24,210 nucleotides of DNA, taken from the IMG/VR virus record IMGVR_UViG_3300016457_001310, positions 1 through 24,210 of that record; one strand, given 5' to 3'. The notes beneath the pieces are model-generated. The model was not told the DNA's origin. It saw nothing but the letters and a program-made list of their open reading frames with translations, and made no database searches. A program made the position numbers and the translations under genes. Of this stretch, positions 6,248-20,714 are shown one piece after another. The stretch's first letter is position 1, and every line of letters begins with the position of its first letter.

Positions 6248-7369
6248 CTAGTCGGATACTATCTCCACCAGCCTCAGAGCTATGATATCCCATCTATACT
6301 CCTTCGAGAGCACCTTCTCTCTCCATTCCCGTACCCTCGCCTTGTACTCGTCTAGGTTATCCAGGATTACGTGCAACTTGTTGAGAGCGTCCTCGACATC
6401 GACAGCGTAGCCGTAGCCACCGTGAAAGGCGTTTCCTGGTAGGGGCTGAACCCTCCTACCCTTCTTGACCCACAGGAACGGGGGTACGTACTCAGACCAC
6501 GAACCGTACTCGCATGCGAGCACTGGCACACCCCTAGCAAGCGATTCTAGAGCAACCATCTCGAAGCCACCGCCTCGGCTGAACATCAGGGTTACGTCAG
6601 CCATATCGAAGAGCGCCATCTTCTCGTAGTCGCTCAGCCACTCGTATACCTGAAGTGCGCCGTACTGCATGACCTGCTGGTACTCGGGTATGTTGGGGAA
6701 CACCGTCTTCAGGACCAGAGCAACATCCTTCCTCTCCCTAGCAAGCCTGGTATACACCTCGTACACCTCTGGCCAGCCCTTCCTCTCACCGCTGTGGACA
6801 AGGAAGAACAGTATGAACTTCTTGTTCCTCCTCATCTTATAGAGGTAGAGCTGCACAAGCGATGAGCTGAGCCTCTGCCTCGGCGCGATCTCCCATACAT
6901 TGGGTGTTGTATACCACTCAGGGTCGACACCGTGCGGAAGCCTGTAGACCCTAGCCCTCACCCCAGACCTCCTAGCCACCTCCACACAGAAGCTGGAGGG
7001 CACGACGAACTTGTCGAACCTGTTAGCTATGGAGACCGCGTAGTCGGTATACGCATCGGAGTCGCAGACATCTATACCTATGAGCTGGTCGTAGAAGCCC
7101 CTCCACCACTGGTAGTAGTCCTCCCTAAACCTACCCCATATATCCTTCCTGCTCTCAAGAACCCTAAACATGATGAAGAAGCCTGGGTGTAGAATCAGGG
7201 AGTACTTGGTCGATGGCGTGAACGCTGGTACCATAAGCTCGTCGAGCTCGTACACCGACACATACCCAAGCCTCCTCATATACTCCAGATGCTTCCTCGC
7301 CACCAGCGTGAAGCTGACGGTGTGCCACTGAGGATAGGCATAGAGTATCGGCTTCAAGACTAGCCCCAC
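6248..7369 (-). CDS. GT-B fold family 4 glycosyltransferase, archaeal filamentous virus type
   Basis: VVPSSF, LPHGVD, ERKG and FSRGGGFEMVALESLARGVPVL, a variant of the E-x7-E motif with Gly at the first Glu. Confidence 0.9.
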   Translation of the reverse strand: MGLVLKPILYAYPQWHTVSFTLVARKHLEYMRRLGYVSVYELDELMVPAFTPSTKYSLILHPGFFIMFRVLESRKDIWGRFREDYYQWWRGFYDQLIGIDVCDSDAYTDYAVSIANRFDKFVVPSSFCVEVARRSGVRARVYRLPHGVDPEWYTTPNVWEIAPRQRLSSSLVQLYLYKMRRNKKFILFFLVHSGERKGWPEVYEVYTRLARERKDVALVLKTVFPNIPEYQQVMQYGALQVYEWLSDYEKMALFDMADVTLMFSRGGGFEMVALESLARGVPVLACEYGSWSEYVPPFLWVKKGRRVQPLPGNAFHGGYGYAVDVEDALNKLHVILDNLDEYKARVREWREKVLSKEYRWDIIALRLVEIVSD

Positions 7370-7413
7370 CCCACTCCATGTAGATGGGTAACCGTGGAGA
7401 AGCTGAAAAACGT

Positions 7414-8127
7414 CTAATGCTGTACCAAGCCAAGCGCCTTCACTACCCAGTAAACGACCTCAGATGCCCCCCTAGGCGGCTCGTCAAAGTTGGTGATAGC
7501 CGTGGCGTCCCTAATGTGGTAGAGCGCGGGTATAGGAGTGTCCCTAACATCGCTCGTAAAGCCGTGGTCTGACACCACCAGCCACCGCCTAGGCTTGAAC
7601 GTCTCTATCAGGTCGAGAGCCAGCTTGCATGCCAGGTCGTACCACTCTATCGCTGTTCTAAGCGCGTCTATGCTTGGTATGGTGGAGAAGAAGTGGTGAT
7701 GAGGCTGATCGGGTACGGGGTACCAAACGAAGAGGATATCCGCATCCCCGTTAGCCTTTACGTAGCTGTGGTACTTCATCAACACCTCCCTAAACCGCTC
7801 CTTAGGCGGCGAGAAGAAGTCCACCCAGTTAGCAGGCCTCGGAACGCCGTGGTATATCGGTGGCATGCATGCTGGTATATTGATAGCCTTTACCCTCCTA
7901 CCCGTAACGAGATCCCATACCCAGGTCGTTATGGTTCCAGGAACGAACTTCCTTAGCTGGAAGAAGGTTGCCATAACCGTGGGGGTCTCTGGAATCACAT
8001 CGACGTACATCATGCAGCGCTTAGCCCCTGGATAGCTCCAGAGCCTACGTATACTCTCTCCCCACCAACAAAACACATTTGCAAAGACGTAGCTGAGACC
8101 GTCTAGCACCACCACCAGGACATCCAT
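7414..8127 (-). CDS. Alkaline phosphatase superfamily protein (phosphodiesterase/sulfatase/phosphotransferase-like)
   Basis: Metal-binding motifs in canonical order: VVVLDG, Thr nucleophile in ETPT, PDQPHH, VVSDHGF and a late His (LYH). Confidence 0.8.
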   Translation of the reverse strand: MDVLVVVLDGLSYVFANVFCWWGESIRRLWSYPGAKRCMMYVDVIPETPTVMATFFQLRKFVPGTITTWVWDLVTGRRVKAINIPACMPPIYHGVPRPANWVDFFSPPKERFREVLMKYHSYVKANGDADILFVWYPVPDQPHHHFFSTIPSIDALRTAIEWYDLACKLALDLIETFKPRRWLVVSDHGFTSDVRDTPIPALYHIRDATAITNFDEPPRGASEVVYWVVKALGLVQH

Positions 8128-8131
8128 GGTA

Positions 8132-8425
8132 TCACGTCGGAGGCGCCCAGTGCACGCCTAGAATAGCCGCCACGAAGCTGAGGACTATGACCATAACCGT
8201 TATCATCGCGCCGACAAGAAACTTTATCAAGCCGTTGCGTCTCTCGACAAGCTTGTTTATGAGCCGCTTTATCTCGCTGACATCGTTCTCGATGTTATCG
8301 ACTCGTTGCTCTACCCGTGCTAATCTCTCGCGCATATCCATTACCATGAGCATCAGCTCCCTTATTTCCTGGTTGGGTACGGGATCATTTGAAGCCCCAT
8401 ACTGCGAAGTTCCCTCCCTCGACAT
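8132..8425 (-). CDS. Coiled-coil protein with C-terminal TM helix
   Basis: Heptads MRERLARVEQRVDNIENDVSEIKRLI, then hydrophobic LIKFLVGAMITVMVIVLSFVAAILGV. The start may be downstream of 8425 because it overlaps the MTase by 41 nt. Confidence 0.75.
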   Translation of the reverse strand: MSREGTSQYGASNDPVPNQEIRELMLMVMDMRERLARVEQRVDNIENDVSEIKRLINKLVERRNGLIKFLVGAMITVMVIVLSFVAAILGVHWAPPT

Positions 8426-8951
8426 AGCCCACCCCCCGAAAACCTATCCACTCAAGCAAGCGCTTTAGGGTTTTCGGATGAAGTACATGGAAATGCGTCT
8501 CGTCGCTGAGAGCCGTGGGGTCTGAGCACGTAACAGATTGTATCCACACAGCGCCCCCAGGCTTCAGAACGCGGTACACCTCGGTAAGCGCCTTCACGTA
8601 GTCAACGATGTGCTCAAGAACCTCTATCATGATAACGACATCGAAGCGGTTCGCAGGGAACTCCAGAGCCTCGGCATTCATGATCAGGTGCGGGTAGTCC
8701 TTCCTCCGATCTGGGGGCTCCACGATGTCTATACCCCAGTAGTTCCAAGAGTACTGGGGTCTCGGAAAGTTCTCGTGTAGCCAACCCACGAGAAAGCCCT
8801 TGAAGCAACCCACCTCCAGGATATCGAGGTGCCCGCGCTCCTTGAAGAGCCTCTCTAGGAACTCCTTAAGCTCCTTGCGCCTAACCAGTAGGAAGCCCCA
8901 GTAGTGCTTCTTGCCAGCCTCGATCATCGCGCTCTTCAGCTCCATGGTCAC
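8385..8951 (-). CDS. Class I SAM-dependent methyltransferase (small-molecule/glycan type)
   Basis: ILEVGC-KG motif I, WGIDI, NAEALEFPANRFDVV, EVLEHI, EVYRVLKPGG. No DPPY/NPPY or PC motif of DNA methyltransferases. Confidence 0.9.
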   Translation of the reverse strand: MTMELKSAMIEAGKKHYWGFLLVRRKELKEFLERLFKERGHLDILEVGCFKGFLVGWLHENFPRPQYSWNYWGIDIVEPPDRRKDYPHLIMNAEALEFPANRFDVVIMIEVLEHIVDYVKALTEVYRVLKPGGAVWIQSVTCSDPTALSDETHFHVLHPKTLKRLLEWIGFRGVGYVEGGNFAVWGFK

Positions 8952-9349
8952 ACCCTAGCAATGATCCACCAGTTGCCGTCCCGATCCGCTACCAGGATAA
9001 CCGCCTCACCGAACGATGCTAGCTCTATAGACGACGAGTTCTCGACGTACTTGCCGCTGGGCGGCGCTATCGTTACGGTGTTCGTCGAGGTATCGATCTT
9101 CTTAACTATGACCGTCACACCGTTGGCTACGGATGGTAACGTGATCGTTACTGACCCCCCAGACGCATCTACGAGGACAAGCTCGTAGGGGTTGGCGGTG
9201 TAGTTAGCCGTAACCTTAACTATCTTGGATATCCTGACCGCTACCGAAGCCATGTCGTAGAGCTCGTTGAGAGCATCAACAACCGAGTTAGCCCATGTTG
9301 ACGATGCTCTCTGGAGCGGCTTCACGTATAGATTATCGTACTTACCCAT
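8948..9349 (-). CDS. 133-aa fibre-associated protein
   Basis: N-terminal helix PLQRASSTWANSVVDALNELY, then TANYTA...LVDASGGSVTITLP...G-TVIVKKID...NTVTI...W, a beta module common in phage tail fibre proteins. Confidence 0.7.
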   Translation of the reverse strand: MGKYDNLYVKPLQRASSTWANSVVDALNELYDMASVAVRISKIVKVTANYTANPYELVLVDASGGSVTITLPSVANGVTVIVKKIDTSTNTVTIAPPSGKYVENSSSIELASFGEAVILVADRDGNWWIIARV

Positions 9350-9356
9350 AGACGCC

Positions 9357-10703
9357 TCACCCCAGACCCCTCTTCCTCAGGAACCTGGTTCTCTCTCTGA
9401 ACCTAAGAGAGGAGAAGGTTCTTAGATGGGTTCTGACAGCGTTGTACAGCTTCTCAAGCACGCTCCTATCCAAGCCGCTTGAGCTCCACTTGTCTAGCCA
9501 CCAGCTCTTCAGCTCGTCCTCGGACATGGTTCTGAGAGCGCCGTCTCCCCATCTATGCGGAGACGCCATGATCGCGAAGAGCTGTAGAACAGCGGACTTG
9601 TACATCCTCATGGTTACTGGGTCTACCGAGCCAAGCATGTTCCTAACCGTGTTGTAAACAACCCTCTCAAGGAACATCCTCTGCGATACTGGCAGAGCAA
9701 AGGTCTCGACACGCTCGCTAGCCGTCCACTGAGTCCTCTCCTCGTATGTCTGGTAGTTAGCCACAGCAAGGGCTGTAGCATGTATCCTGTTAACGAAGTT
9801 GCGCCACACAGCATCCACCAGCATCGTGACGATCGGTGGCGTGAGCTTGTACGGATGCACAACATCGCACCAGTGGAAGTAGTCCCATGGATACTCGTCC
9901 CAGTAGCCACACGCCTGGAAGTCTATCAGGTCCTCGTACTCGACCTCAACCTCCTGCAAGTCGTAGTTTATGTACGTAACCCTACCCGCGCTACCCTCCT
10001 TAGCCCACAGAGAGAAGTCCCACCATCCGTAGTCCCATGTAAGGGCCTGCTCCTTGACCGAGAAGATCGCTACCAGCCTATTGAAGAGGTTCCTAGCGAG
10101 CTCTGGGTTCATATTCAGGTTCCTAGCGATAGCTTCTACCCTATCCCTAGCCGTCCTCACGTCACCCCTCTTCTTTAGGAAGGCGAACAGCGTCGATTTG
10201 AAGAACTCCCTAACGGCTATCGGGTCGTAGTAGGAGTACCCATACCTAGAGATATCGTAGTAACCCTTCTCGGTTACGGAGGGCTTAAGGGCCTCCGCGA
10301 ACGGCGACTCCATGAACGCCTCCATGAAGTCGACCACGCTGTAGACCGACTTGATCATAATGTCCTCGAACTGCGGGTAGAGCTCCGCTATAACGTCGTC
10401 GATGCTTACCCTCTCAAGCTTTATCAGGACTCCCTTAGCGAACTCCTCGGGTGACGGAAGTTCGACACTCCATAACAGGTTCCATGGCTCTACCTCGCTT
10501 ATCGGTATACCCAGAAGAAAGAGGGATACAAGGGTAGAGAGAAGGGTGTCGCTCACTACCTGATCCGAGTAGTCCCTAAGCCAGTCAAAAATATTGAAAG
10601 ACTGGCTATAGACAGACCACGCTGCATCGTCCGACAGCGCCTTGTACCAGTACTTGCGCTTCTGATCCAGTAGCTTCCACGCCTCCCTGCTCAGAGCACC
10701 CAC
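9357..10703 (-). CDS. 448-aa putative minor structural protein
   Basis: Repeated aromatic-acid motifs GYYDISRYGYSYYDP, TWDYGWWDFSLW and GYWDEYPWDYFHW. Lies just downstream of the giant protein, as the second minor structural gene does in rudiviruses (from recall, not searched). Confidence 0.75.
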   Translation of the reverse strand: MGALSREAWKLLDQKRKYWYKALSDDAAWSVYSQSFNIFDWLRDYSDQVVSDTLLSTLVSLFLLGIPISEVEPWNLLWSVELPSPEEFAKGVLIKLERVSIDDVIAELYPQFEDIMIKSVYSVVDFMEAFMESPFAEALKPSVTEKGYYDISRYGYSYYDPIAVREFFKSTLFAFLKKRGDVRTARDRVEAIARNLNMNPELARNLFNRLVAIFSVKEQALTWDYGWWDFSLWAKEGSAGRVTYINYDLQEVEVEYEDLIDFQACGYWDEYPWDYFHWCDVVHPYKLTPPIVTMLVDAVWRNFVNRIHATALAVANYQTYEERTQWTASERVETFALPVSQRMFLERVVYNTVRNMLGSVDPVTMRMYKSAVLQLFAIMASPHRWGDGALRTMSEDELKSWWLDKWSSSGLDRSVLEKLYNAVRTHLRTFSSLRFRERTRFLRKRGLG

Positions 10704-10705
10704 AG

Positions 10706-10900
10706 CTACCTACCCCTTCGACCACCACGAATGGTCTCCTCAATGCGCTTCCTAACCTCCTCGAACTCCTTCCTAGCCTTCTCTATCCTCTCGTTCAGCT
10801 CCCTAACGCTCTTAGCCAGCTCCTCTATCCTCTTCCTGAGCTCGGGATCCACCTCGAAGCCCAGGTCGGTGCTGGGGCTAGACATGCGCCCTCCCCGCAT
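10706..10900 (-). CDS. Small coiled-coil protein
   Basis: LRKRIEELAKSVRELNERIEKARKEFEEVRKRIEE heptads. Fills the gap between two large genes. Probable start is the ATG at 10885 after GGGGAGGG. Confidence 0.75.
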   Translation of the reverse strand: MRGGRMSSPSTDLGFEVDPELRKRIEELAKSVRELNERIEKARKEFEEVRKRIEETIRGGRRGR

Positions 10901-10909
10901 TACCTATCT

Positions 10910-13900
10910 CTACCTACCGTATATTGTCTGTATGCGTTTCTTCTCAAGCTCCGCACCGTCAACTATCAGCGCTATCTCATCATCGGTGAGACCGTACTTC
11001 TTGAGAGCCTGTAGCTTCTGTATCAGGGTGTTCCTATCTATGATACCGTTGGCGTAGGCGTAGACCAGCCTGTTGCGGTACCACGCTATCTGCCTCCACA
11101 CGATGCGGTTCCTAGCCAGCTTCTTGTAGTACTCTATCTGCTTCTGGTACCTCGCTACGTCTATACCCCTAGCTCTGAGCACATCGCTGAGGATCTGCTC
11201 CCACTCTGGTATGTACCTGGCATCGGCTACGAGCTGGCGGATGGTCGGTACCAGCCAGCTAAGCACCCTGTACTCCTTGCGTAGCTGGAGAGCGAGGCTG
11301 AACACCTCAAGCTCCTTCCCGACCCAGCCGCCCTTCCTCATCCACTCAGCTACCTTGCTAGCGACCTCGCGAGACACCGTGAAGTACTCGTAGAGCCTCC
11401 TGTACTCAGCAACGAGCTGGTTCACCTCGCCCGCTATAGACCTAGCCTCTATGTACCTCAGCCACAGATCGGCAAAGTCCTTGGGAACCCTCCTAAGCTG
11501 TAGCACCCTATCGATTATGGTTCTGGGCACCTCGATGTACTCGACCATGGACGCTATGGTTCCTAGGCTAGGTACGTACTCCCTAGCGGACTCTATGAGT
11601 AGCTCGTAGTATACGCGCTTCTCGATCAGCTCTATCTCCTTCGGGGTGAAGCCGTAGCTCTTAGCGTCGTCGAGGAGCTTCTTCCACTCATCCTCAGAGA
11701 TAACACCGTACCTGAGAGCCCTAGCAGCAACGCTTAGAACCGCCTTGTAGTCGCTCTTAACTGGCCTCACCTGTATGTATTTCAGCCATATATCTATCCA
11801 CTCCTGTGGAACCCTCCTAGCCTCAAGCACCTTCCTAATCAGATCCTCCTTGAGCACGAGATACTCAGCCAGCGTTGCGAGCATCGTCGGTGTCGGTAGG
11901 TAGGCTCTCCTAAGCTCCATAGCCTCGGCAATCTCCTCCTCCAGATCCACGCGCTCCTTGATGAACTCGATCTCCTTGGATGTGAAGCCGTACTGACCGA
12001 GCTTATCTATGAACTCCTCCAGCTCCTTCTTGGTGATAACACCGTACCTGAGAGCCCTTATCTTGACCGAGAGCAACGACTTGACATCGCTCTTAATAGG
12101 CTTAGCCTCTATGTACTTCTTCCAGTAGTCTATCCACTCATCGGCTACCCTATGGTACTTCAGAGCGCTCAGAACCTTGTCCTCGGGCAAGACAATGTAC
12201 TCAGCAAGTGTTGCGAGCTGCGACGGTGTTGGAATCCTAACCTTAGCCTCCTCCAGCTTCTCCTCCAAGTCTATCCTATCCCTAAGTATCTTGATCTCCT
12301 CGTCGGTGAAGCCGTACTCCTTAGCCTTATCGATTATCTCGTCAAGCCTCTTCTTCTCTATGACGTTACGTAGGTAGGCACGGATAGCCACAGATATGTA
12401 CGCCTTGTAGTCGCTCTTCAGCGGCTTTACCTCTATATACTTCTCCCATATCTCCCTCCACTTCTCGGATACGCCATACCTCTTCAGAGCCTCCTCAACG
12501 AGATCCTTGGGTAGCGCTAGGTACTCGGCTAGAACCGCCAGCGTCGATGGAGACGGAATCCTCTCCCTAGCCGCCTGCCTAAGCTCGTCTATCCTCCTCT
12601 CGAAGGCGGCTATAACGTTGTACATCACCCACTCATGAGGCGCTATACCGAACGCCTGGAACACGTCCCTGTTAGCGTCGTAGAACGCAAGCAGCTTCTT
12701 AGCCTCGTCAGCACCCTCGATAACCAGCTCACCGCCCCTCACGGTGAACTTCATAGAGTACTTACTGAGTATATCCACGACCTCGTCGATGCCCATACCC
12801 AGAGCAAGCGCGTTGTATATCCTGGTCCTGAGAAGCGTCAGCTCGTCCTGTATCGGCTTCCTAGCAACGTAGAGCCTCCAGTACTGAAGCTCGTCGCTCG
12901 GCATGTTGAAGTGCTCCAAAGCCTTCAGGCTCGTGCTGATGGCTTCGGGCACGATCTCTAGGAGGGTCGCGTAGGTTGTTAGACCAGGCGTGTACCAGAC
13001 CACGTTGGCGTCTATATACTTCTTGGCGAGATCCTCGGAGAAGCCCAGCTTCTTGAGTTGCTCGATAGCCTCCGAGACGGCTATCCTCCTCGATCTGAGC
13101 AGGTTGATGATCGCCTTAGCCTTGACCTCCCTCTCGAACCTATAGACCATGAACTCCACGGAGAGCTCTATCGCCTCCCTAACGATGGGGTGCTCATGCA
13201 TCTTCTCCACTAGCTTGGATACCCAGCCCTTGGCCTCGTCAATCGTTACATAGCCGTAGCGCAGAGCCCATAACACCGACCACAGCAGGTACCTAGCGTA
13301 GAACCTCGTGCGCTCCCTAGCCTCAAGCTCTATGATCGCCTCGGCATACTTGCTCCAGGCCTCCCAGTAGCCAGTATCTAGCACTAGGGACAGCTCCTTG
13401 CCAGTGAGGCTCTTTACCGTCTGCTTGAAGAACTTCTCGTTTATCGCGCTGACAATATCGGCAATGATCTCCCTAGCCTTGGCTGGATCCACCACGTAGT
13501 AGGCTACGCTGCGTATGATGTACCTATACGCCTCTCTGTAGATATCGAGAGCCCTATCCATAGTTGCCCTGATCTCCAGGAGCTTGGACTCGGCTGGTAG
13601 GAACGCTATCGGGTACTCAACGGTTGCCGATACCCAGTCCCTCTTCTCTAGGTCGAAGTAGCCTACCTCGAACTTAACCGTGAAGAAACCCGAGAGTAGC
13701 TGGTGTAGGTGGTCTAGGCTCCATATACCCTCCTTGTATAGGTTGATGAAGCCAGTTCTGAGCAGTGTGCGCTCCTCGGTTAGGGCGTTTATTGTCTCGG
13801 CTATCGCTACCCACGGTATCCAGTACGGGTGTATACCCGTAGCCTGCAACACCCTACAGAACTGCTTGAGGTCGAAGACTATCTCACCCTTCTTCAGGTA

Positions 13901-16900
13901 CTGGAGGTAGAGATCCGCCATCGGTCTAGCCGACGCAGTGGTGCCCTCGGGTATGAGACTCTTGGTTATCTCGTGGATAGCCTTCTTCAGACCGATGCCG
14001 TATGCAGACCAGTAGTCGAAGAGGCCCCACCTTGTCATCCATCTCAGGTCTATCTTGGTGGGTATGTCAGCCATAAGCTCGATCATTATGGCGTTATCGG
14101 TTGGCCACCCAGGTTGCCACGGAAACCTGGCATAGTCATGCCACTTCATGTAGGTGCTGATCATCTTTTGCAACAAATCATATCTGAAGTTCAGCTCCTT
14201 GGGAGCCACAGCCTTCACAACCGTTGGGTCTAGACCGAAGGTCTTCATTATGTTCTCGTCGACTGGTGCCTCAGGGTTCCACAGCTCACCAGCGATACCC
14301 CTCCAGAAGAACTCTGCTAGCTTCTCTGGCGGTGGGTACCTGTAGTGCAGTAAGTAGAACATGAACGCCACGTCTGGCGTGAAGCCGTGCATAGCCATAA
14401 CTGCCGCAAAGTGCCTTGGATCCTGTATGATGTCCCTCACCATCATCCTAGCTAGCTCGCTCGGGCTCGGTATTGCCCACACCATCGATACTGGGAAGAG
14501 CCTCTCCTTCCTGGTGTATGACGTAAACCTATCCCATATCCTCAGAGCCCCCAGCTCCCTATCGTAGAGCTCGGATACATTGCCGAGTTGCTTAGCGACC
14601 TCCTCAGCGAGCTTGGTATTGAGACCATAGATCCTCTCTATAAAGCCCTTGTAGATACCACCCATCCTGAGCTGGTCTACAAACATCTTGTAGTTGTCCA
14701 TGAGTATCGGTGTCGGTATAGACCTCCTAACCAAGTTGAGAGTGTGCTCCATTGGTGGAAGCTCGACGGTTACGTACTCGGTCAGGTTGTACCTAGTGAT
14801 TGCCCTGGTTGGCTCGGCCCACCATATCATGTGGCCTATGATCATGTACCTCGCTACGTCTGGCATGAACTTCTCGAACTGCGAAACAGCCTTCTCAAGA
14901 ACGTCCTTCAGCTTCAGTCTTATCCTAGCACCGACACCGAGTGGCTCACCACTTATCTCGGTATCTGGTAACGCAGATACCAAGGGCTTCAGTATGAGGC
15001 CAACACCGTAGATGGCGGCCGATATCAGCACGCCAACGTTGAGCAGGTTGTATATGAACCTCACGGGGTTCTTCTTGGCCTCCTCTATCACCTCGCCGAG
15101 CTTCTCGACCATTATCGGTGTGAGCGGTAGTAGTATAGCCTCGATTATGGGGAACCATGGAGACGCAAGTATCTCGTAGAGCGCTGGGCTAGACCTAGCC
15201 ACTATCAGGTTGGTTATAGCCTTCATAGCGTTGCCGATAGCTGTAGCGATATCCTTACCGACCTCTCCAATAACCGAGATAACAGTCATTACAGCTCTGC
15301 CTACCCACGAAGCAAGCGTCTTAAATGCCGAGACAAACCAGTTACCGAGTCCCGTCAGGATGTTCCATAGCCACTGCGCACCCTCGACGATCTTCTGTCC
15401 GATCCACTGTAGAGAGTTCCAAACTGTCGTTACTAGCCTCTCTGGTAGCTGCATAACCGCGTTCACGAAGCCAGTGAGGTAGACACCCACCAGCTTCAGG
15501 TTCTCAGACACCTTGGTAAGAGCCTCGCCTAGCTTCGCGAAGCCCTCGCTTACCAGCGTTCCGAGCTTGGTCAGGTAGTCCCACAGTGATATGCCTACCT
15601 CTCTAAGCGTCCCGAAGACGATCTGCGGAATCCTCTGGATCTCCTCAACAACACCGCTTACCAGCGACGGGAACTGCTCGGTGAAGAACCTAGCCACCGT
15701 CTCCAGTCCGCTCCTAACCATGTCTAGGAACTGGGTGAACGCCTCGGTAATGGGCTTCACAACGTTCTCGCTGATCCACGTGCCTAGACCAGCTACCGCC
15801 TCCTTTACCTGGTCTACGAGGCTCGGAAGCGTCTCGGCTATGAAGCTCCTAACGGTCTCGAACCCCTCGGAGATGAAGCCGATCAGGTTCTCAAGAGCGC
15901 CCCTAAGCGGGGCGAGCACGTTGCTCTGGATGAAGCTCCATATACCCGCTAGGGCGCTCTGGATCTGGCTAACCATGCTAGCGATAGCCGACGATACGCT
16001 TCCGAGACCCTGCTGAACCGCTGATAGGATGCTCTGCACAGCCGATGTTAGAGGCGCGATAACGTTCTGCTGGATCCACGAAGCGATCCCCGCAACAGCA
16101 TCGCGGAGCTGAGCAACGAAACTATTGATGTAGCTCGGCAACTCCTCGGTGAAGAACCTAGATACGGTCTGTAGACCGCTGTTGATGAAGTCTATGAAGC
16201 TCTGGAAAGCCGCTGTTAGGGGTGCTACAACGTTCTCCTGTACCCAGGTAGCTATTCCAGATAGCGTCTGCTGTATAGACGCAATAGCCTGGCTTACGAA
16301 TGCTGGTAGCTCCTCGGTGAAGAACCTGGAGACCGTCTCCAGACCGCTACTAATTAGCTGTATCAACTGGCTAAACGCGTTGCTCAGCGGTGCAACAACG
16401 TTCTCCTGGATCCAGGTGGCTAGCTCACCAACAGCTTGCTGAACCATCGCTGGTATCTGCGACACAAAGCTCGTCACGGTGTCGAGACCGCGTGTAATCG
16501 TCTCTATCAGGTTATTTACAGCGGTTAGCAGGGGTGTGACCACATAGTCGTTTATCAGCGTGCTGATGTCGCTTATCCATTTCTGGAGCTCCGCAAACAT
16601 CTGCGGAACGGTCTCGGTGAAGAACGTCGTTAGCGTCGATATGCCCTGGCTGATCCAGCTCATCAGGTTGTTAATAGCGCTGAACAGCGGGTCGATTATG
16701 TCCTCCTGTATCCAGCTCCATACACCGCTTATCTGGCGACTTAGCCAATCCAGAGCGTTCTCAACCGTGCCTGGTATCTGCTGTAGGAAGCTCCACACCT
16801 GCTCAACGAGGTTCTTGATCGTGTCGAGGAACGGCTTAGCTACCGTGTCCCAGAGCCTGCGACCTATCTCCTCGACCGTCTGAGCAAACCAGGAGGCGAG

Positions 16901-17158
16901 CTCGCTCATACGGTCGTAGAGCCACTGCTGTAGCTGTCCAATCGGGTCGGTGATGCCGTGCTCCGAGGTAACGAGAGCCTCTAGATCGAGCTCCTCTAGA
17001 TCCCTGATAACCGTTACGGTGAAGACCTCCTCGATACCCTTGCTCCACCTAAGCTCCCATAGACCAGCCGCGCTGAGAGTAGCCGCTAGGTACTTAGCGT
17101 CCTCGGCGGTGAAGAGCTCCAGCCTCTGATGGCTGGTCACAGCTACACCCGAGAACAA
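10910..17158 (-). CDS. Giant (about 2080 aa) virion terminal-structure/fibre protein with tape-measure-like N-terminus and C-terminal helical repeats
   Basis: Uninterrupted 6.2-kb ORF. Residues ~70-660 carry amphipathic W/F-periodic repeats (WIQENVVAPL...GLETVSRFFTEELP). The C-terminal third has ~6 repeats starting P(S/T)PxxLAxLAEY, several with YGFTxxEI. The GTG at 17140 (RBS GGGTG) is an alternative start. Confidence 0.85.
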   Translation of the reverse strand: MFSGVAVTSHQRLELFTAEDAKYLAATLSAAGLWELRWSKGIEEVFTVTVIRDLEELDLEALVTSEHGITDPIGQLQQWLYDRMSELASWFAQTVEEIGRRLWDTVAKPFLDTIKNLVEQVWSFLQQIPGTVENALDWLSRQISGVWSWIQEDIIDPLFSAINNLMSWISQGISTLTTFFTETVPQMFAELQKWISDISTLINDYVVTPLLTAVNNLIETITRGLDTVTSFVSQIPAMVQQAVGELATWIQENVVAPLSNAFSQLIQLISSGLETVSRFFTEELPAFVSQAIASIQQTLSGIATWVQENVVAPLTAAFQSFIDFINSGLQTVSRFFTEELPSYINSFVAQLRDAVAGIASWIQQNVIAPLTSAVQSILSAVQQGLGSVSSAIASMVSQIQSALAGIWSFIQSNVLAPLRGALENLIGFISEGFETVRSFIAETLPSLVDQVKEAVAGLGTWISENVVKPITEAFTQFLDMVRSGLETVARFFTEQFPSLVSGVVEEIQRIPQIVFGTLREVGISLWDYLTKLGTLVSEGFAKLGEALTKVSENLKLVGVYLTGFVNAVMQLPERLVTTVWNSLQWIGQKIVEGAQWLWNILTGLGNWFVSAFKTLASWVGRAVMTVISVIGEVGKDIATAIGNAMKAITNLIVARSSPALYEILASPWFPIIEAILLPLTPIMVEKLGEVIEEAKKNPVRFIYNLLNVGVLISAAIYGVGLILKPLVSALPDTEISGEPLGVGARIRLKLKDVLEKAVSQFEKFMPDVARYMIIGHMIWWAEPTRAITRYNLTEYVTVELPPMEHTLNLVRRSIPTPILMDNYKMFVDQLRMGGIYKGFIERIYGLNTKLAEEVAKQLGNVSELYDRELGALRIWDRFTSYTRKERLFPVSMVWAIPSPSELARMMVRDIIQDPRHFAAVMAMHGFTPDVAFMFYLLHYRYPPPEKLAEFFWRGIAGELWNPEAPVDENIMKTFGLDPTVVKAVAPKELNFRYDLLQKMISTYMKWHDYARFPWQPGWPTDNAIMIELMADIPTKIDLRWMTRWGLFDYWSAYGIGLKKAIHEITKSLIPEGTTASARPMADLYLQYLKKGEIVFDLKQFCRVLQATGIHPYWIPWVAIAETINALTEERTLLRTGFINLYKEGIWSLDHLHQLLSGFFTVKFEVGYFDLEKRDWVSATVEYPIAFLPAESKLLEIRATMDRALDIYREAYRYIIRSVAYYVVDPAKAREIIADIVSAINEKFFKQTVKSLTGKELSLVLDTGYWEAWSKYAEAIIELEARERTRFYARYLLWSVLWALRYGYVTIDEAKGWVSKLVEKMHEHPIVREAIELSVEFMVYRFEREVKAKAIINLLRSRRIAVSEAIEQLKKLGFSEDLAKKYIDANVVWYTPGLTTYATLLEIVPEAISTSLKALEHFNMPSDELQYWRLYVARKPIQDELTLLRTRIYNALALGMGIDEVVDILSKYSMKFTVRGGELVIEGADEAKKLLAFYDANRDVFQAFGIAPHEWVMYNVIAAFERRIDELRQAARERIPSPSTLAVLAEYLALPKDLVEEALKRYGVSEKWREIWEKYIEVKPLKSDYKAYISVAIRAYLRNVIEKKRLDEIIDKAKEYGFTDEEIKILRDRIDLEEKLEEAKVRIPTPSQLATLAEYIVLPEDKVLSALKYHRVADEWIDYWKKYIEAKPIKSDVKSLLSVKIRALRYGVITKKELEEFIDKLGQYGFTSKEIEFIKERVDLEEEIAEAMELRRAYLPTPTMLATLAEYLVLKEDLIRKVLEARRVPQEWIDIWLKYIQVRPVKSDYKAVLSVAARALRYGVISEDEWKKLLDDAKSYGFTPKEIELIEKRVYYELLIESAREYVPSLGTIASMVEYIEVPRTIIDRVLQLRRVPKDFADLWLRYIEARSIAGEVNQLVAEYRRLYEYFTVSREVASKVAEWMRKGGWVGKELEVFSLALQLRKEYRVLSWLVPTIRQLVADARYIPEWEQILSDVLRARGIDVARYQKQIEYYKKLARNRIVWRQIAWYRNRLVYAYANGIIDRNTLIQKLQALKKYGLTDDEIALIVDGAELEKKRIQTIYGR

Positions 17159-17174
17159 GTTGATAATATGGAAG

Positions 17175-17182
17175 CTTAAAAA
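17175..17182 (-). promoter_or_regulatory. TATA box candidate for the giant protein gene; may also act as a T-tract terminator
   Basis: TTTTTAAG on the minus strand in the AT-rich gap 17159-17203. Confidence 0.5.
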
Positions 17183-17203
17183 CGTGGTATATGTATCTAC
17201 ACG

Positions 17204-17470
17204 TCACTCTATCCGCTTGTATATATCGTGCTTCCCGCTCATGATAATGAACTTCATCTTCGCTATCTCGGCACGGAGCTTGGCCTTCAGCTCAGCGTTG
17301 CTCTCAACATCAAGCGTAAAGATTGGGGATCTAAAACCGTTCCACTCAACGAAAACCGTTACCAAAAAACGCTTCTGCTTGTTGACCCACTCATGCTTGG
17401 TTATCTCAAGTATATAGACCTTCGCACCATCGAGCTCGACCAGGACAGGGGGAACGACTACCCTTGTCAT
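17204..17470 (-). CDS. Hypothetical 88-aa protein
   Basis: ATGA overlap with the upstream gene, AGGAG RBS, alpha/beta pattern. Confidence 0.8.
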   Translation of the reverse strand: MTRVVVPPVLVELDGAKVYILEITKHEWVNKQKRFLVTVFVEWNGFRSPIFTLDVESNAELKAKLRAEIAKMKFIIMSGKHDIYKRIE

Positions 17471-17742
17471 CTCCTAGCCCTTCTCTTTATGATCTTGTAG
17501 AAGTGCCACGTCGCTCTAACCACGCTCCTAGCCGCATCCACGAGCTCCTTGAGCTCTGGGTACCTATCCACGAGCTCGTTGGGTAACAGCGCTACGACGT
17601 AGCTCAGCTCCTGAGCCGACATTATGAGGTTGTTCATCGCATCTAGAAGCTCCTTCTGCTCGGGTGTCAGCTCCACGTCTTGCGCTGGTAGCTGGGTCTG
17701 AGCCTGAACCTGGGGAGCGCTAGGTGCGCGGGTCTCGGACAC
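17467..17742 (-). CDS. Hypothetical 91-aa helical protein
   Basis: Fits tightly between the glycosyltransferase and the 88-aa gene. GGGGGT RBS. Confidence 0.8.
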   Translation of the reverse strand: MSETRAPSAPQVQAQTQLPAQDVELTPEQKELLDAMNNLIMSAQELSYVVALLPNELVDRYPELKELVDAARSVVRATWHFYKIIKRRARR

Positions 17743-17746
17743 GTTC

Positions 17747-18793
17747 TCAACCCCCGTATGAGAACATTGCTAGGAACTCCCTATAAGTCTTCCGCATATC
17801 GAACTCGCGAGCTCTTTCCAGACACCTAGCCCTAACCTCGTCGCGGTTCTTAAGCACGTAGTCCTTTGCATATATAATCATCTCCGCGAAGTCCTTGGGG
17901 TCGTAGTAGTGCAACTCGTAGTCTATGGCACCTATCTCCGACCTGTATACAACGCTCCTCACCCTAACCCTGAAGCTGGTATCCTTCGTCGTTACCTCGC
18001 TCAGGGGCTCGTAATCAGCGTGCACAACTGGCTTGCCAGCCGCAAGAGCTTCTAGAACGGGATATCCGAAGCCCTCGGCTAGGGATGGCTGTGCATAGAG
18101 ATCGAAGCTGTGTAGAAGACCGTAGTACTCGTCCTCGCTCAGCTTGCCGAACTGGTCGATCAGTATAACGTTGTCAACACCGCTGTACTTCTCAACACCC
18201 TTGGAATCCGTTAGAACCACGAACTTTATCGACGGATCCCTATCGTGTACAAGCCTTATCACCTCAGCAAAGACATCGTGACCCTTACGCATGTAGCCAC
18301 CAGCTATGTACCCAACAACGAAGTCATCGTCTTTGAGACCCAGCTCCCTCCTAACGTACCTAGCCCTCCACCCGAACGCGCCAACAGCATCGATATCTAT
18401 ACCGTGGTAGACCACCTTGGTAACCGTTGCCCCAGCCTCCCTCAGCTTACTCATCGTGTACCGAGAGTTAGCGACAAAGCTGAGATCCCTATAGATCCAG
18501 GCATCGCCGTGAACGCGCCTAGCCCTCCCCTCTATAGTTGTGTAGAACACGCACTTCTTTCCGTACACAAGCATCTCCCTGCACACGAAAGCGAATGGAG
18601 ATACCCACGCTGGGTCGAAGGTCATCACAACGAGCACGCCGTCGACATCCTTGTAGACCTCTGGATCGGCATTGGGGTAGCCGAGGATATCCTTGACATT
18701 GACACCGCCCTCCCTGAGAACCGTAGCAACGTCGTTCGCTACGCGCTTAAGCGATGCGGATCTATGAGAAGTTAACACGATTACGCTAACCAT
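17747..18793 (-). CDS. GT-B fold family 4 glycosyltransferase
   Basis: FVANSRYT, VVYHGID, MRKG, and PSLAEGFGYPVLEALAAGKPVV with a canonical E-x7-E. Directly downstream of the capsid genes. Confidence 0.93.
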   Translation of the reverse strand: MVSVIVLTSHRSASLKRVANDVATVLREGGVNVKDILGYPNADPEVYKDVDGVLVVMTFDPAWVSPFAFVCREMLVYGKKCVFYTTIEGRARRVHGDAWIYRDLSFVANSRYTMSKLREAGATVTKVVYHGIDIDAVGAFGWRARYVRRELGLKDDDFVVGYIAGGYMRKGHDVFAEVIRLVHDRDPSIKFVVLTDSKGVEKYSGVDNVILIDQFGKLSEDEYYGLLHSFDLYAQPSLAEGFGYPVLEALAAGKPVVHADYEPLSEVTTKDTSFRVRVRSVVYRSEIGAIDYELHYYDPKDFAEMIIYAKDYVLKNRDEVRARCLERAREFDMRKTYREFLAMFSYGG

Positions 18794-18818
18794 GATCCCC
18801 TAGCGAGAAGCTCAGCGA

Positions 18819-18840
18819 GAGGTGTAAAAAATGGTTTTTG
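18819..18840 (-). terminator. Oligo-T terminator of the capsid transcript
   Basis: CAAAAACCATTTTTTACACCTC on the minus strand, 30 nt after the MCP2 stop. A near-identical motif follows the divergent operon at 20617-20636. Confidence 0.6.
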
Positions 18841-18869
18841 GCTCTTAGGGGAGGTTATCGATAGGCTGG

Positions 18870-19244
18870 TTAGTACGGTGGTACGGCTCCTATGAGTGCC
18901 TCTATGATCCTGTCGAGCACTGCTGGATCGCACTTGTAGGCCGTTACGAAGTAGCTCTTGATGCCGCTAACCTCCTTCTGGAGTGTTAGACCGCTGTGGC
19001 TGAACATTGTCTTAGCTACTATCTGCGCGAAGGCTAGATAGGGAGCCCATAGACCAGTTGGCACACCCTCTTCGCTCAGGATGTTCCTAGCTACCTCCAC
19101 AGCGTTGTATATGGCGGCAGTAGCGCTCTCGAACCTAGCCTCCATAATGGGCTTGACAGCCGTCAGCCTGTTGGTCACGTTGGTACCGTCGTACTTAGCC
19201 TCGTACTTGGCTCTCATATCACCTAATCTCTTAACGATGGGCAT
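18870..19244 (-). CDS. Major capsid protein 2, SIRV2-like (Adnaviria) fold
   Basis: AKYEAKY...NILSEEGVPTGLWAPYLAFAQIVAK...SGIKSYFVTAYKCDPAVLDRIIEALIG matches the rudivirus MCP pattern as I recall it (AKWQAKF...VLTQYGITGPNRAIYQGFGLKVAR...NGLKGYYISAFNANPQVLDAVVNIITG). Strong GGGGGTGA RBS. Confidence 0.88.
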   Translation of the reverse strand: MPIVKRLGDMRAKYEAKYDGTNVTNRLTAVKPIMEARFESATAAIYNAVEVARNILSEEGVPTGLWAPYLAFAQIVAKTMFSHSGLTLQKEVSGIKSYFVTAYKCDPAVLDRIIEALIGAVPPY

Positions 19245-19270
19245 GGGATCTCACCCCCCACCCATCACCT

Positions 19271-19627
19271 TTATCCAACTATCAGGTTCGCGATCTTGTC
19301 TAGTATAGCGGGGTCGGCACCCTTAGCAACGAACCACTGCTTGAGACCGCTGGCAATCGCTTGCAGGTCAGCACCCTCGTGGCTCAGAGCCTTGCTTGCT
19401 AGCTTCATCGCGAACGCGTAGTAGACACCGTGGAACCCTGCTGGAACACCCTCGCTCTCAAGTATGTTCCTAACGCGCTCCCTGACAGCCGCCATCACGC
19501 CGCTGCCCTCGATGTACCTAGTCACAGCGATGTCCTTTACCGCACCGTATCTAGTACCTGTCTGATCTGGTGGTGTCTTTGCCTTGAACTTCTCTACTCG
19601 GTCTGCAAGGGTCTTGACTATGGGCAT
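19271..19627 (-). CDS. Major capsid protein 1, SIRV2-like (Adnaviria) fold
   Basis: Paralog of MCP2: shared MPIVK-L-D start, RNIL--EGVP-G, Y-AFA, SH-G--LQ, SG-K--FV and DPA-LD-I. Confidence 0.88.
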   Translation of the reverse strand: MPIVKTLADRVEKFKAKTPPDQTGTRYGAVKDIAVTRYIEGSGVMAAVRERVRNILESEGVPAGFHGVYYAFAMKLASKALSHEGADLQAIASGLKQWFVAKGADPAILDKIANLIVG

Positions 19628-20264: not shown

Positions 20265-20277
20265 GGAGGACTGAGCC

Positions 20278-20616: not shown

Positions 20617-20636
20617 CAAACACCGTTTTTCACCTC
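20617..20636 (+). terminator. Oligo-T terminator
   Basis: CAAACACCGTTTTTCACCTC immediately after the stop, followed by a pyrimidine-rich tract. Confidence 0.55.
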
Positions 20637-20714
20637 CCTATTCTCTCCCCTAGGGGCTGTGACCGAAAGGCTTATTAGTGTACACCCCCTAGTGGGTATC
20701 TGGGATGGCACACC

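What the first reader, a model, noticed from the sequence alone, without database searches (positions are those of the whole stretch)
6248..19627. Probable new lineage of filamentous archaeal virus: rudivirus-like gene order, but two MCPs and high GC
Seen: two tandem paralogous ~120-aa proteins with the SIRV2 capsid pattern, followed by GT4, a giant repeat protein, a 448-aa aromatic-motif protein, a SAM methyltransferase and a second GT4 of the GG-FE type. An Hjc lies elsewhere in the window. Established, from recall: this order parallels the Rudiviridae core (MCP next to a GT; large fibre protein, second minor protein, MTase, GT). Characterised rudiviruses such as SIRV2 are AT-rich Sulfolobales viruses with a homodimeric MCP, while heterodimeric MCPs typify enveloped lipothrix- and tristromaviruses. 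Inference: with GC above 50% and two MCPs that are still clearly alignable, this may be an undescribed Adnaviria group with a non-Sulfolobales host and an independent MCP duplication.
Basis: partly seen in the sequence, partly recalled or inferred. Interest (0 to 1): 0.85.

Follow-up and report, generated by a model that had tools for sequence, protein, structure and literature searches.

The report
Vent rod-shaped archaeal virus, two capsid genes
The window is most of the genome of an uncultured rod-shaped archaeal virus from deep-sea hydrothermal sediment: it is related to the Sulfolobus rudiviruses but has two adjacent capsid genes, and because similar vent and hot-spring viruses have been described since 2023 it is a solid addition, not a surprise.

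Summary
The region contains two tandem 118- and 124-aa proteins with the SIRV2 capsid fold. They are followed by a GT4, a 2082-aa P1070-like repeat protein, a 448-aa protein, a SAM methyltransferase and a second GT4. An Hjc lies at 22893-23318.

The window is the whole contig IMGVR_UViG_3300016457_001310, from Pescadero Basin hydrothermal sediment. It is an incomplete genome: a 28.3-kb contig of the same virus exists, and no terminal repeats were seen.

Gene order matches the rudivirus SSRV1, but identities are only 24-33% for the capsid proteins and 29-31% for the glycosyltransferases. It belongs to a well-populated, uncultured clade found in Guaymas and Pescadero sediments and in New Zealand and Yellowstone hot springs. 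That clade is defined by one tandem capsid-gene duplication, and both copies are kept full-length under purifying selection. The clade is separate from Rudiviridae and from a proposed Demeterviridae member, both compared directly.

- The lineage is non-rudiviral, and the ML tree favours a lineage-specific duplication.
- GC is not diagnostic, because relatives span 34-59%.
- Some rudiviruses already carry a tandem second coat gene.
- Non-Sulfolobales, two-capsid adnaviruses are now well documented (Ahmunviridae, Chiyouviridae, Demeter-/Gaiaviridae, Baiyan- and samediviruses).

The host remains unknown. PBV300 and Chiyouvirus could not be compared directly.

The parts
19271..19627 (-). MCP1, 118 aa; the upstream capsid paralogue, SIRV2 fold
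   Evidence: PF12193 E 9e-12. PDB 6WQ0/3J9X by sequence. AF2 pLDDT 90.8, best fold match 3J9X at TM 0.70. Orthologues are 58-79% identical, with a conserved basic N-terminal arm. dN/dS is about 0.06-0.27.
18870..19244 (-). MCP2, 124 aa; the downstream capsid paralogue, SIRV2 fold
   Evidence: PF12193 E 1e-12. PDB 6WQ0 E 2e-9. AF2 pLDDT 84.5, 3J9X at TM 0.68. 41 homologue clusters. dN/dS is about 0.09-0.31.
17747..18793 (-). GT4 glycosyltransferase number 1 (348 aa); counterpart of the rudiviral GT that lies next to the MCP
   Evidence: Glycos_transf_1 and phrog_2170. 29% identity over the full length to SSRV1 ORF13-339, E 2e-39. 119 homologue clusters in metagenomes.
17467..17742 (-). Conserved 91-aa protein of unknown function
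   Evidence: Homologue at the same position in relatives, 30-72% identity.
17204..17470 (-). Conserved 88-aa protein of unknown function
   Evidence: Conserved across the wider assemblage, including the Demeterviridae member L121 (32%).
10910..17158 (-). Giant minor structural protein (2082 aa as an ORF, 2076 aa as called); an expanded P1070-type terminal-fibre protein
   Evidence: phrog_7334 E 8e-58, the family that SSRV1 ORF23-1115 hits at 1639 bits. tblastn to 42 rudivirus records. The SSRV1 N- and C-terminal modules each match several places. DNA repeats D1-D5.
10706..10900 (-). Small coiled-coil protein (64 aa)
   Evidence: Only sub-threshold coiled-coil matches in Pfam. Homologue in L011/L112.
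9357..10703 (-). 448-aa minor structural protein with a C-terminal MCP-like helical domain
   Evidence: hhalign of its family against the MCP alignment gives probability 92.7%, E 4e-7, residues about 333-424. Conserved next to the giant protein or the GT in all relatives.
8948..9349 (-). 133-aa protein of unknown function
   Evidence: Weak hits to phrog_8859 and phrog_4302. Partial homologues in relatives.
8385..8951 (-). SAM-dependent methyltransferase (188 aa)
   Evidence: Methyltransf_23 E 1e-19 and Methyltransf_11 E 1e-16. Only far-sub-cutoff UbiE/UbiG-class hits. Not the rudiviral phrog_5108 family.
8132..8425 (-). 97-aa protein with a coiled coil and one hydrophobic segment
   Evidence: Sub-threshold Pfam hits. 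Hydrophobic stretch at 63-81.
7414..8127 (-). 237-aa protein with an alkaline-phosphatase-superfamily (Phosphodiest) match and a hydrophobic N-terminus
   Evidence: PF01663 E 3.6e-6, above cutoff. Hydrophobic stretch at 1-19. 35% identical homologue in L114.
6248..7369 (-). GT4 glycosyltransferase number 2 (373 aa), with GGGFE motif
   Evidence: phrog_2170 E 1e-40. 27-32% identity over the full length to rudiviral GTs. 31% to SSRV1 ORF27-343.
5466..6017 (-). 183-aa fibre-like protein, probably part of the adsorption module
   Evidence: phrog_5417 E 2e-18 and phrog_4176 (tail fibre) E 2e-14. 51% identical to a protein of Demeterviridae vOTU_0037.
5085..5453 (-). 122-aa protein, paralogue of 191-559
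   Evidence: 49% identity to the 191-559 product. 55-nt stretch 96% identical between the two genes.
191..559 (-). 122-aa protein, paralogue of 5085-5453
   Evidence: 59-72% identical homologues in L115 and L112.
1468..4624 (-). Two large proteins of unknown function (463 aa and 582 aa; the second is repeat-rich), in the variable end of the structural arm
   Evidence: ORFs. No family hits. Homologues in L112 (37%) and in L022/L026 (22-31%).
19728..22883 (+). Divergently transcribed block of five genes, one with an RHH/DUF7557 N-terminus
   Evidence: GC skew flips sign here. Gene calls on the opposite strand. DUF7557 E 1e-7. Homologues in close relatives.
22893..23318 (-). Holliday junction resolvase Hjc (141 aa)
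   Evidence: PF01870 E 2e-21. NCBIfam Hjc equivalog 83 bits against a cutoff of 70. phrog_6591.

Best explanation
The window is an incomplete linear dsDNA genome of an uncultured rod-shaped or filamentous archaeal virus (realm Adnaviria, class Tokiviricetes) from Pescadero Basin hydrothermal sediment. Region 6248-19627 is its virion module.

Shown:
- Two tandem, full-length SIRV2-fold capsid proteins.
- Two GT4 glycosyltransferases.
- An internally amplified P1070-type fibre protein.
- A 448-aa protein whose C-terminus is a third MCP-like domain.
- A methyltransferase, and an Hjc resolvase elsewhere in the window.
- All in rudivirus order.

The virus belongs to a monophyletic, uncultured clade found in marine vent sediments and terrestrial hot springs. 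In that clade one tandem MCP duplication is kept in every member. By direct comparison the clade is distinct from Rudiviridae and from a proposed Demeterviridae member.

Inferred, by analogy with solved adnavirus virions:
- MCP1 and MCP2 form a heterodimeric capsomer that wraps A-form DNA.
- The GTs glycosylate virion proteins.
- The giant protein forms terminal fibres for attachment, and the MCP-like 448-aa protein sits at the virion ends.
- Hjc resolves replication intermediates.
For: Identity and fold of both MCPs.

Synteny and homology with SSRV1 (MCP, GT339, ORF23-1115, GT343, Hjc).

Provenance and incompleteness:
- The window is IMGVR_UViG_3300016457_001310.
- The same virus is found at 100% identity on a 28,306-nt contig and in two other assemblies.
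- No inverted terminal repeat was found.

Clade: the two-MCP + GT + 91 aa + 88 aa + giant + 448 aa module is present in L006, L010-L019 and L031.

MCP tree:
- The upstream copies form one clade (96/88).
- That clade sits inside a 46-row clade (98/91).
- The 46-row clade lies in a 53-row clade (99/96), which is sister to the 15-row clade (98/94) that holds the Demeterviridae member.
- SSRV1 lies outside both.

Both copies look functional:
- Both have a full-length basic N-terminal arm.
- dN/dS is 0.06-0.31.
- The SSRV1 paralogue, by contrast, lacks the first ~32 profile positions.

Third MCP-like domain.

Direct comparison with Demeterviridae vOTU_0037 (L121, identified): MCP 29-33% and GT 31% identity, and the MCP is followed by the other GT type.
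Against: - No virion, host or genome termini are known. The contig is partial, and an ORF runs off its left end.
- A heterodimer is not shown. In the rudivirus SSRV1 the tandem paralogue is reported not to be in the virion (Duan et al., read), and the authors of the Demeterviridae preprint suspect that only one copy is structural.
- PBV300 (Ahmunviridae), Chiyouvirus, the Gaiaviridae exemplar, Baiyanviruses and samediviruses were not available as sequence. Membership in one of them is excluded only by their published descriptions.
- The MCP alignment has only 124 columns.
- An AU test does not reject placing the SSRV1 paralogue with the MCP1 clade (p = 0.39).
Confidence: 0.85

Rival explanations
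1. The contig is an ordinary member of an already named or proposed family (Ahmunviridae from the same basin, Gaiaviridae, Chiyouviridae or Baiyanviruses), so the lineage is not undescribed.
For: - PBV300 comes from Pescadero Basin, has several MCP-like genes, a GT next to the MCP, a fibre-protein homologue and an Hjc.
- The preprint read describes tandem MCP copies next to a GT in hot-spring rod-shaped viruses.
- Relatives of the window occur in the same New Zealand sample as the Gaiaviridae exemplar.
Against: - Ahmunviruses are described as having MCPs of 122 and 131 aa, about 24% identical and in separate genome blocks. Here the MCPs are 118 and 124 aa, 41% identical and tandem.
- Neither the window nor 14 related UViG ids appear in the preprint's tables, although those tables are truncated as stored.
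- The GT homologue search returned no protein named for a virus among its 119 hits, which ranged down to 28% identity.
- The Gaiaviridae exemplar, IMGVR_UViG_3300020567_000363, was not picked up by any of my MCP or GT pattern scans, which did pick up other contigs of that sample.
- The one Demeterviridae genome in hand falls in a different, well-supported MCP clade.
Confidence: 0.25
2. Only one of the two MCPs builds the capsid as a homodimer, as in rudiviruses. The other has a different role, such as end-cap, scaffold or regulator.
For: - SSRV1 carries a tandem coat-like ORF10-108 that is reported absent from virions.
- The 448-aa protein shows that MCP-like domains are reused in minor proteins.
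- The overall gene order is rudiviral.
Against: - Unlike SSRV1 ORF10-108, both copies keep the full N-terminal DNA-wrapping arm, with 8 K+R in the first 45 residues each. SSRV1 ORF10-108 aligns only from profile position 33.
- Both are similarly conserved across the clade.
- According to ICTV, all structurally solved adnaviruses with two full-length MCPs use heterodimers.
Confidence: 0.35
3. The tandem MCP pair is ancient and shared with Hoswirudivirus (SSRV1 ORF10 and ORF11), not an independent duplication. Single-MCP lineages lost one copy.
For: - The positions match: the upstream copy, then the MCP, then the GT.
- The AU test does not reject the MCP1 clade plus SSRV1 ORF10-108 as one clade (p = 0.39).
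- The preprint argues for common ancestry with Hoswirudivirus.
Against: - Both window MCPs are closer to SSRV1 ORF11-134 (28-33%) than to ORF10-108 (25-28%), and closest to each other (41%).
- In the ML tree the MCP1 clade is nested among the downstream copies of the same genomes. The SSRV1 MCP and the Demeterviridae-type clade, whose fetched loci show no tandem second copy, lie outside with 98-99% bootstrap support.
- Most rudiviruses would need an additional loss.
Confidence: 0.2
4. The region is not a virus. It would be cellular DNA, a defective provirus or an assembly chimera.
For: Relatives are deposited inside MAG bins of many taxa.
Against: - No cellular marker, tRNA or integrase was found.
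- The bins are taxonomically inconsistent (Desulfurococcales, Thermotogae, Deltaproteobacteria, Archaeoglobales), as expected for mis-binned viral contigs.
- Four independent assemblies give the identical sequence.
- The gene content is the adnavirus structural set throughout.
Confidence: 0.02

Closest known systems
Rudiviridae, especially Hoswirudivirus SSRV1 (NC_074634)
   Same: - SIRV2-fold MCP.
- A tandem second coat-like gene upstream of the MCP, and a GT just downstream.
- A P1070-type giant minor structural protein, followed by another protein, an MTase, a small protein and a second GT.
- An Hjc.
- Few membrane proteins.
   Different: - MCP identity is only 24-33% and GT identity 29-31%.
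- Both MCP copies are full-length here, while SSRV1 ORF10-108 is N-terminally truncated.
- The giant protein is twice as long through module amplification.
- The MTase belongs to a different family.
- No homologue was found of the rudiviral ORF22-595, ORF24-399, Cas4-like nuclease or pyramid protein.
- The source is marine vent sediment, not an acidic hot spring.
Proposed Demeterviridae (Caldarchaeales-linked rod-shaped viruses; bioRxiv 10.1101/2025.08.23.671958), member vOTU_0037 = IMGVR_UViG_3300005573_000154
   Same: - A shared module of MCP, GT, 448-aa-type protein, 88-aa protein and giant protein.
- The fibre-like 183-aa and 122-aa proteins are about 50% identical.
- The family is described as having multiple MCP copies next to a GT and a UbiG-like MTase.
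   Different: - MCP 29-33%, GT 31% and giant protein 27% identity.
- The MCP is followed by the GT2-type enzyme, not the GT1-type.
- It falls in a different, well-supported MCP clade.
- No ArsR-type regulator was found in the window.
Ahmunviridae (Methanophagales virus PBV300, NC_074636; plus the Thermococcales-linked ahmunviruses)
   Same: - Same basin and habitat.
- More than one MCP-like gene, a GT beside an MCP, a fibre-protein homologue, an Hjc and an MTase.
   Different: - The ahmunvirus MCPs are described as divergent (about 24% identical) and in separate genome blocks, with an MCP-fusion gene, TFB and a queuine tRNA-ribosyltransferase. None of these was seen here.
Lipothrixviridae, Ungulaviridae and Tristromaviridae (heterodimeric MCPs)
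   Same: - Two paralogous SIRV2-fold MCPs, presumably forming a heterodimer.
- Fold matches to AFV1, SFV1 and PFV2 capsid proteins.
   Different: - Those matches are much weaker than the matches to rudiviruses.
- Those viruses are enveloped and share little other gene content with the window.
- Here the paralogues are young (41% identical), and the rest of the genome is rudivirus-like.

Membership tests
Adnaviria / Tokiviricetes | Major capsid protein with the SIRV2-type alpha-helical fold | tested here: met
   PF12193 above cutoff for both MCPs. Sequence hits to 6WQ0 and 3J9X. AF2 models match 3J9X best, at TM 0.68-0.70.
Adnaviria / Tokiviricetes | Linear dsDNA genome with inverted terminal repeats | tested here: inconclusive
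   No ITR in the window, nor between its left end and the end of the 28.3-kb contig. The contig is incomplete, and an ORF runs off its left end.
Adnaviria / Tokiviricetes | A-form DNA in a helical filament | not testable with these tools
   Needs virions and cryo-EM.
Rudiviridae | Conserved gene set and order (MCP next to a GT; P1070-type protein; second GT; Hjc) | tested here: met
   SSRV1 annotation and BLASTP. phrog_7334, phrog_7510 and phrog_2170 are shared.
Rudiviridae | One structural MCP forming a homodimer | tested here: inconclusive
   Two full-length, equally conserved MCP genes are present. Virion composition is unknown.
Rudiviridae | Sequence relatedness at family level to classified members | tested here: not met
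   - No DNA match.
- MCP tblastn finds no rudivirus at E 0.01.
- MCP 24-33% and GT 26-32% identity.
- Only about 6 of 29 window proteins find an SSRV1 homologue.
- There is a clear gap in GT identity between the window's clade (43-67%) and the rudiviral isolates (26-30%).
Rudiviridae | Sulfolobales host in an acidic terrestrial hot spring | not testable with these tools
   The source is Pescadero Basin marine hydrothermal sediment. No host link was obtained.
Ahmunviridae | Two divergent MCPs (about 24% identical) in separate genome blocks, plus an MCP-fusion gene | tested here: not met
   Here the MCPs are tandem and 41% identical. No fused double-MCP ORF is present.
Ahmunviridae | Proteome or MCP relatedness to PBV300 | not tested
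   NC_074636 is not in the collections on hand. No PBV300-named protein was retrieved.
Demeterviridae (proposed) | Relatedness to vOTU_0037 (IMGVR_UViG_3300005573_000154) | tested here: not met
   MCP 29-33% and GT 31% identity. Different starred MCP clades.
Demeterviridae (proposed) | UbiG-like methyltransferase and ArsR-like regulator | tested here: inconclusive
   The MTase gives only weak UbiE/UbiG-class hits, 30-33 bits against cutoffs of 103-378. No ArsR hit; one sub-threshold winged-helix hit lies in the 4-kb extension.
Samediviridae (proposed) | Core replication set: PCNA, MCM-like protein, AEP PriS, SSB and an AAA+-wHTH protein | tested here: not met
   None was found in the window or in the 4-kb extension. 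The genome is incomplete, so this is not final.
Chiyouviridae | Non-adjacent MCPs, a Cas2 homologue, mini-CRISPR arrays and many membrane proteins | tested here: not met
   The MCPs are adjacent. No Cas2 hit and no array-like repeats. Only three or four proteins have a hydrophobic segment. PP467602 was not available for a direct comparison.
pPolB-encoding hot-spring rod-like viruses (Tamarit 2022; Asgard virome 2026) | [quoted passage not shown] | tested here: not met
   No polymerase domain in any ORF scanned.

The most novel reading that the evidence does not exclude
The window represents a family-level adnavirus lineage that has not yet been classified. In it, a rudivirus-type and probably non-enveloped virion switched from a homodimeric to an obligate heterodimeric capsomer through its own recent tandem MCP duplication. 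Because the paralogues are still 41% identical, the lineage would be a natural intermediate for studying how heterodimeric filament capsids evolve. Its adsorption genes appear to be exchanged with Caldarchaeales-linked Demeterviridae.
Probability: 0.35. Interest if true: 0.55.

Novelty: new member of a known kind. Interest (0 to 1): 0.35.

Why it matters
Adnaviria were long known only from terrestrial acidic hot springs. This contig adds a well-sampled clade that spans deep-sea vent sediments and neutral hot springs. The MCP homologue search returned 41 clusters, and 17 of the 50%-identity representatives score E 1e-30 or better.

The clade offers a young, clearly alignable pair of capsid paralogues in an otherwise rudivirus-like genome. 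That makes the homodimer-to-heterodimer transition experimentally approachable: express both proteins and assemble them on DNA.

It also shows that GC content and "two MCPs" are poor markers of novelty in this realm. The practical value is for taxonomy, for capsid evolution, and as a search seed for host assignment. It does not change what is known about how these viruses work.

Tried and rejected
- Megablast of the whole window and tblastn of MCP1 against the phage/archaeal-virus collection found nothing. Longer proteins did find rudiviruses.
- PBV300 (NC_074636) and Chiyouvirus (PP467602) could not be fetched by accession because they are not in the collection.
- A profile search with a 67-sequence MCP alignment and a GT search, both aimed at named virus proteins, returned only unnamed metagenome or MAG proteins.
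- BFVD fold search returned only rudi- and lipothrixvirus proteins, with no ahmunvirus.
- Searches of the preprint's supplements for the window's and relatives' ids found none. One GT2 hit proved to be a Demeterviridae member and served as the anchor.
- Profile comparison of the 448-aa family with SSRV1 ORF24-399 and ORF22-595 showed no relationship.
- A full-text search for the sample and run accessions found no paper.
- There are no tRNAs to hint at a host.
- CRISPR spacer matching was not feasible with the tools.
- MAG bin labels were considered as host evidence and rejected as decisive because they conflict.

Full report
**What is there**

Nearly all long ORFs up to about 19.6 kb lie on the minus strand. 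GC skew confirms this and flips between 20 and 23 kb, where a divergent plus-strand block sits.

The two small ORFs at 19271-19627 and 18870-19244 are capsid proteins.
- Both pass the curated threshold of Pfam PF12193, the Sulfolobus virus coat protein family.
- Both match the solved capsid proteins of SSRV1 (6WQ0) and SIRV2 (3J9X) by sequence alone.
- They are 41% identical to each other.
- AlphaFold2 models built on alignments of homologues are confident, with pLDDT 90.8 and 84.5. They show the expected long N-terminal helical arm plus a C-terminal helix bundle.
- Foldseek ranks SIRV2 3J9X first for both, followed by SSRV1 (for the MCP2 model), AFV1, SFV1 and PFV2 capsid proteins.

The rest of the list is also real.
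- There are two GT4 glycosyltransferases and a SAM methyltransferase at 8385-8951.
- The neighbouring 237-aa ORF at 7414-8127 is a separate protein with an alkaline-phosphatase-superfamily (Phosphodiest) match.
- The 2082-aa protein belongs to the same PHROG as the rudiviral P1070-type minor structural protein.
- An Hjc resolvase is present elsewhere in the window.

**Provenance and completeness**

The window is the entire IMG/VR contig IMGVR_UViG_3300016457_001310. Sample 3300016457 is a combined assembly of sediment near hydrothermal vents in Pescadero Basin, Gulf of California.

The same virus was assembled at 100% identity three more times. One of these is a 28,306-nt contig that extends the window by 4.1 kb on the right. 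That extension adds a B116-like protein and a partial PAPS-reductase-like protein, but no replication enzymes.

No inverted terminal repeat is present, and an ORF runs off the left end. The genome is therefore incomplete.

**Comparison with rudiviruses**

The annotated genome of SSRV1 has this order: coat-like ORF10-108, MCP ORF11-134, ORF12, GT ORF13-339, then further on ORF23-1115, ORF24-399, MTase, ORF26 and GT ORF27-343, with an Hjc in between.

The window has the same order. BLASTP pairs the following:
- GT1 with ORF13 (29% identity).
- GT2 with ORF27 (31%).
- The giant protein with ORF23.
- Hjc with ORF19.
- Both MCPs with ORF11 (28-33%).

Two of its premises need correction. First, a tandem second coat gene is already present in a rudivirus. 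Second, the published record says such a second copy is not in the virion.

Sequence distance is large. There is no DNA match. Only about six proteins are shared with SSRV1. GT identity drops from 43-67% within the window's own clade to 26-30% for all rudiviral isolates.

**The clade**

MCP and GT homologues are abundant in public metagenomes.
- The MCP2 search found 41 clusters and the GT1 search found 119.
- An exhaustive profile search found 626 MCP-like representatives, 17 of them at E 1e-30 or better.

The fetched loci show the module MCP, MCP, GT, 91 aa, 88 aa, giant protein, 448 aa conserved in contigs from several sites:
- Guaymas and Pescadero sediments.
- Orakei Korako, New Zealand.
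- Washburn Spring, Yellowstone.

GC across contigs carrying the module ranges from 34% to 59%, so high GC is not a property of the lineage.

A wider assemblage shares the giant protein, the 448-aa protein and the GTs, but its fetched loci show no tandem second MCP copy. One of these contigs, IMGVR_UViG_3300005573_000154, is listed as Demeterviridae vOTU_0037 in a 2025 preprint. This allowed a direct test.
- Its MCP is 29-33% and its GT 31% identical to the window's.
- Its MCP is followed by the other GT type.

In an MCP tree rooted on the SSRV1 MCP:
- The Demeterviridae-containing clade (98/94) is separate from the 53-row clade (99/96) that contains the window.
- Within the 53-row clade, a 46-row clade (98/91) holds all tandem pairs.
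- All upstream copies form one clade (96/88).

This is the pattern expected from one duplication at the base of this clade with both copies retained. It is not airtight. The alignment has 124 columns, and an AU test does not reject joining the long-branched SSRV1 paralogue to the MCP1 clade (p = 0.39).

**Are both MCPs used?**

Both keep the basic N-terminal arm, with 8 K+R in the first 45 residues each. Both have conserved lysines and arginines there across orthologues. Both show dN/dS of roughly 0.06-0.31, although dS is saturated and the values are rough.

The SSRV1 paralogue aligns only from profile position 33. ICTV states that adnaviruses with two MCPs form heterodimers.

I therefore favour a heterodimeric capsomer. 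This is inference, and the rudivirus-like alternative keeps substantial weight.

**A third MCP-like domain**

The 448-aa protein family shows weak but recurrent hits of its C-terminus to the MCP profile. Profile-profile comparison gives 92.7% probability, E 4e-7, over about 82 columns.

This fits the "MCP-like minor structural protein" reported for rudiviruses, ahmunviruses and Baiyanviruses. No relationship to SSRV1 ORF24 or ORF22 was detected with single sequences.

**What is already known**

ICTV now lists six adnavirus families. They include Ahmunviridae, which is ANME-1-linked, from Pescadero Basin and 41.5 kb, and Chiyouviridae, which is Bathyarchaeia-linked.

Recent work adds further groups:
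- Baiyanviruses of Asgard archaea.
- Samediviridae and new ahmunviruses linked to Thermococcales.
- pPolB-encoding rod-like viruses.
- Demeterviridae and Gaiaviridae linked to Caldarchaeales. These are explicitly described as having two capsid copies next to each other and to a GT.

The window lacks several defining features of these groups:
- The samedivirus replication core.
- A pPolB.
- Cas2 and mini-arrays.
- The separated, 24%-identical MCP pair described for ahmunviruses.

PBV300, Chiyouvirus, the Gaiaviridae exemplar and the Baiyanviruses could not be compared as sequences. The claim that the lineage is undescribed therefore rests partly on published descriptions.

**Host**

No tRNA is present, and no spacer matching was possible.

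Relatives sit in MAG bins labelled Desulfurococcales, Thermoprotei, Thermosphaera, Thermofilum and Geothermarchaeota. Others are labelled Methanotrichaceae, Thermotogae, Archaeoglobales and Deltaproteobacteria. That is a weak lean toward Thermoproteota and nothing more.

There is one lead. The fibre-like 183-aa and 122-aa proteins are about 50% identical to those of the Caldarchaeales-linked Demeterviridae genome, while core proteins are 25-33% identical. This suggests an exchanged adsorption module.

**Verdict**

The object is a partial genome of an uncultured adnavirus from a distinct clade defined by tandem MCPs. It is a new member of a known and rapidly growing kind, not a new kind. Interest is moderate.

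Noticed in passing
window 9357-10703 (-): The 448-aa protein ends in an MCP-like helical domain (hhalign 92.7%, E 4e-7). The window therefore encodes three MCP-fold proteins, not two.
   Followed up: yes
window 191-559 (-), 5085-5453 (-) and 5466-6017 (-); L121 20295-21045; L115 15422-15787: Two 122-aa paralogues are 49% identical and share a 55-nt stretch at 96% identity. They and the 183-aa fibre-like protein are 48-59% identical to proteins of distant lineages, including a Caldarchaeales-linked Demeterviridae genome whose core proteins are only 25-33% identical. This looks like an exchanged adsorption module, and possibly gene conversion between the paralogues.
   Followed up: partly
window 10910-17158 (-): The giant protein is twice the rudiviral P1070 length. 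The N-terminal module of SSRV1 ORF23 matches four to five staggered places (residues about 84-788). Its C-terminal module matches about three places (1296-2066). This fits the DNA repeat periods of 168/300 nt and 324/336 nt.
   Followed up: partly
window 19728-22883 (+): This is a divergent plus-strand block of five genes, supported by a flipped GC skew and by gene calls. The longer minus-strand ORFs listed here (19665-20060 and 20121-20474) are probably not genes. One product has an RHH/DUF7557 N-terminus and is likely a transcription regulator.
   Followed up: partly
window 1-190 and L002 1-4088: Three assemblies of the same virus end within 8-36 nt of window position 1, yet a minus-strand ORF runs off that end and there is no ITR. 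The 28.3-kb contig adds a B116-like protein and a partial PAPS-reductase-like protein on the other side.
   Followed up: partly
L006 (JGI 3300005099, contig Ga0072682_123122, 44,957 nt): A two-MCP relative sits on a 45-kb contig, longer than the 41.5-kb maximum ICTV gives for Adnaviria. The contig carries phosphoglucomutase, a sugar nucleotidyltransferase and a LAGLIDADG-containing 748-aa protein. Other relatives lie on contigs of 34-46 kb.
   Followed up: no
window 8385-8951 (-) and 7414-8127 (-); L114 11068-13615: The methyltransferase is not the rudiviral MTase family (phrog_5108), although it sits at the same position. Next to it is a 237-aa Phosphodiest-type protein with a hydrophobic N-terminus. 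Both have 35-39% identical homologues side by side in a distant relative.
   Followed up: no
L023 12603-13370; L029 10001-11686; L027 5816-6967: Relatives without a tandem second MCP carry further MCP-like domains fused to other domains, in proteins of 256, 562 and 384 aa. This resembles the MCP fusions reported for ahmunviruses, chiyouviruses and BaiyanV2.
   Followed up: no
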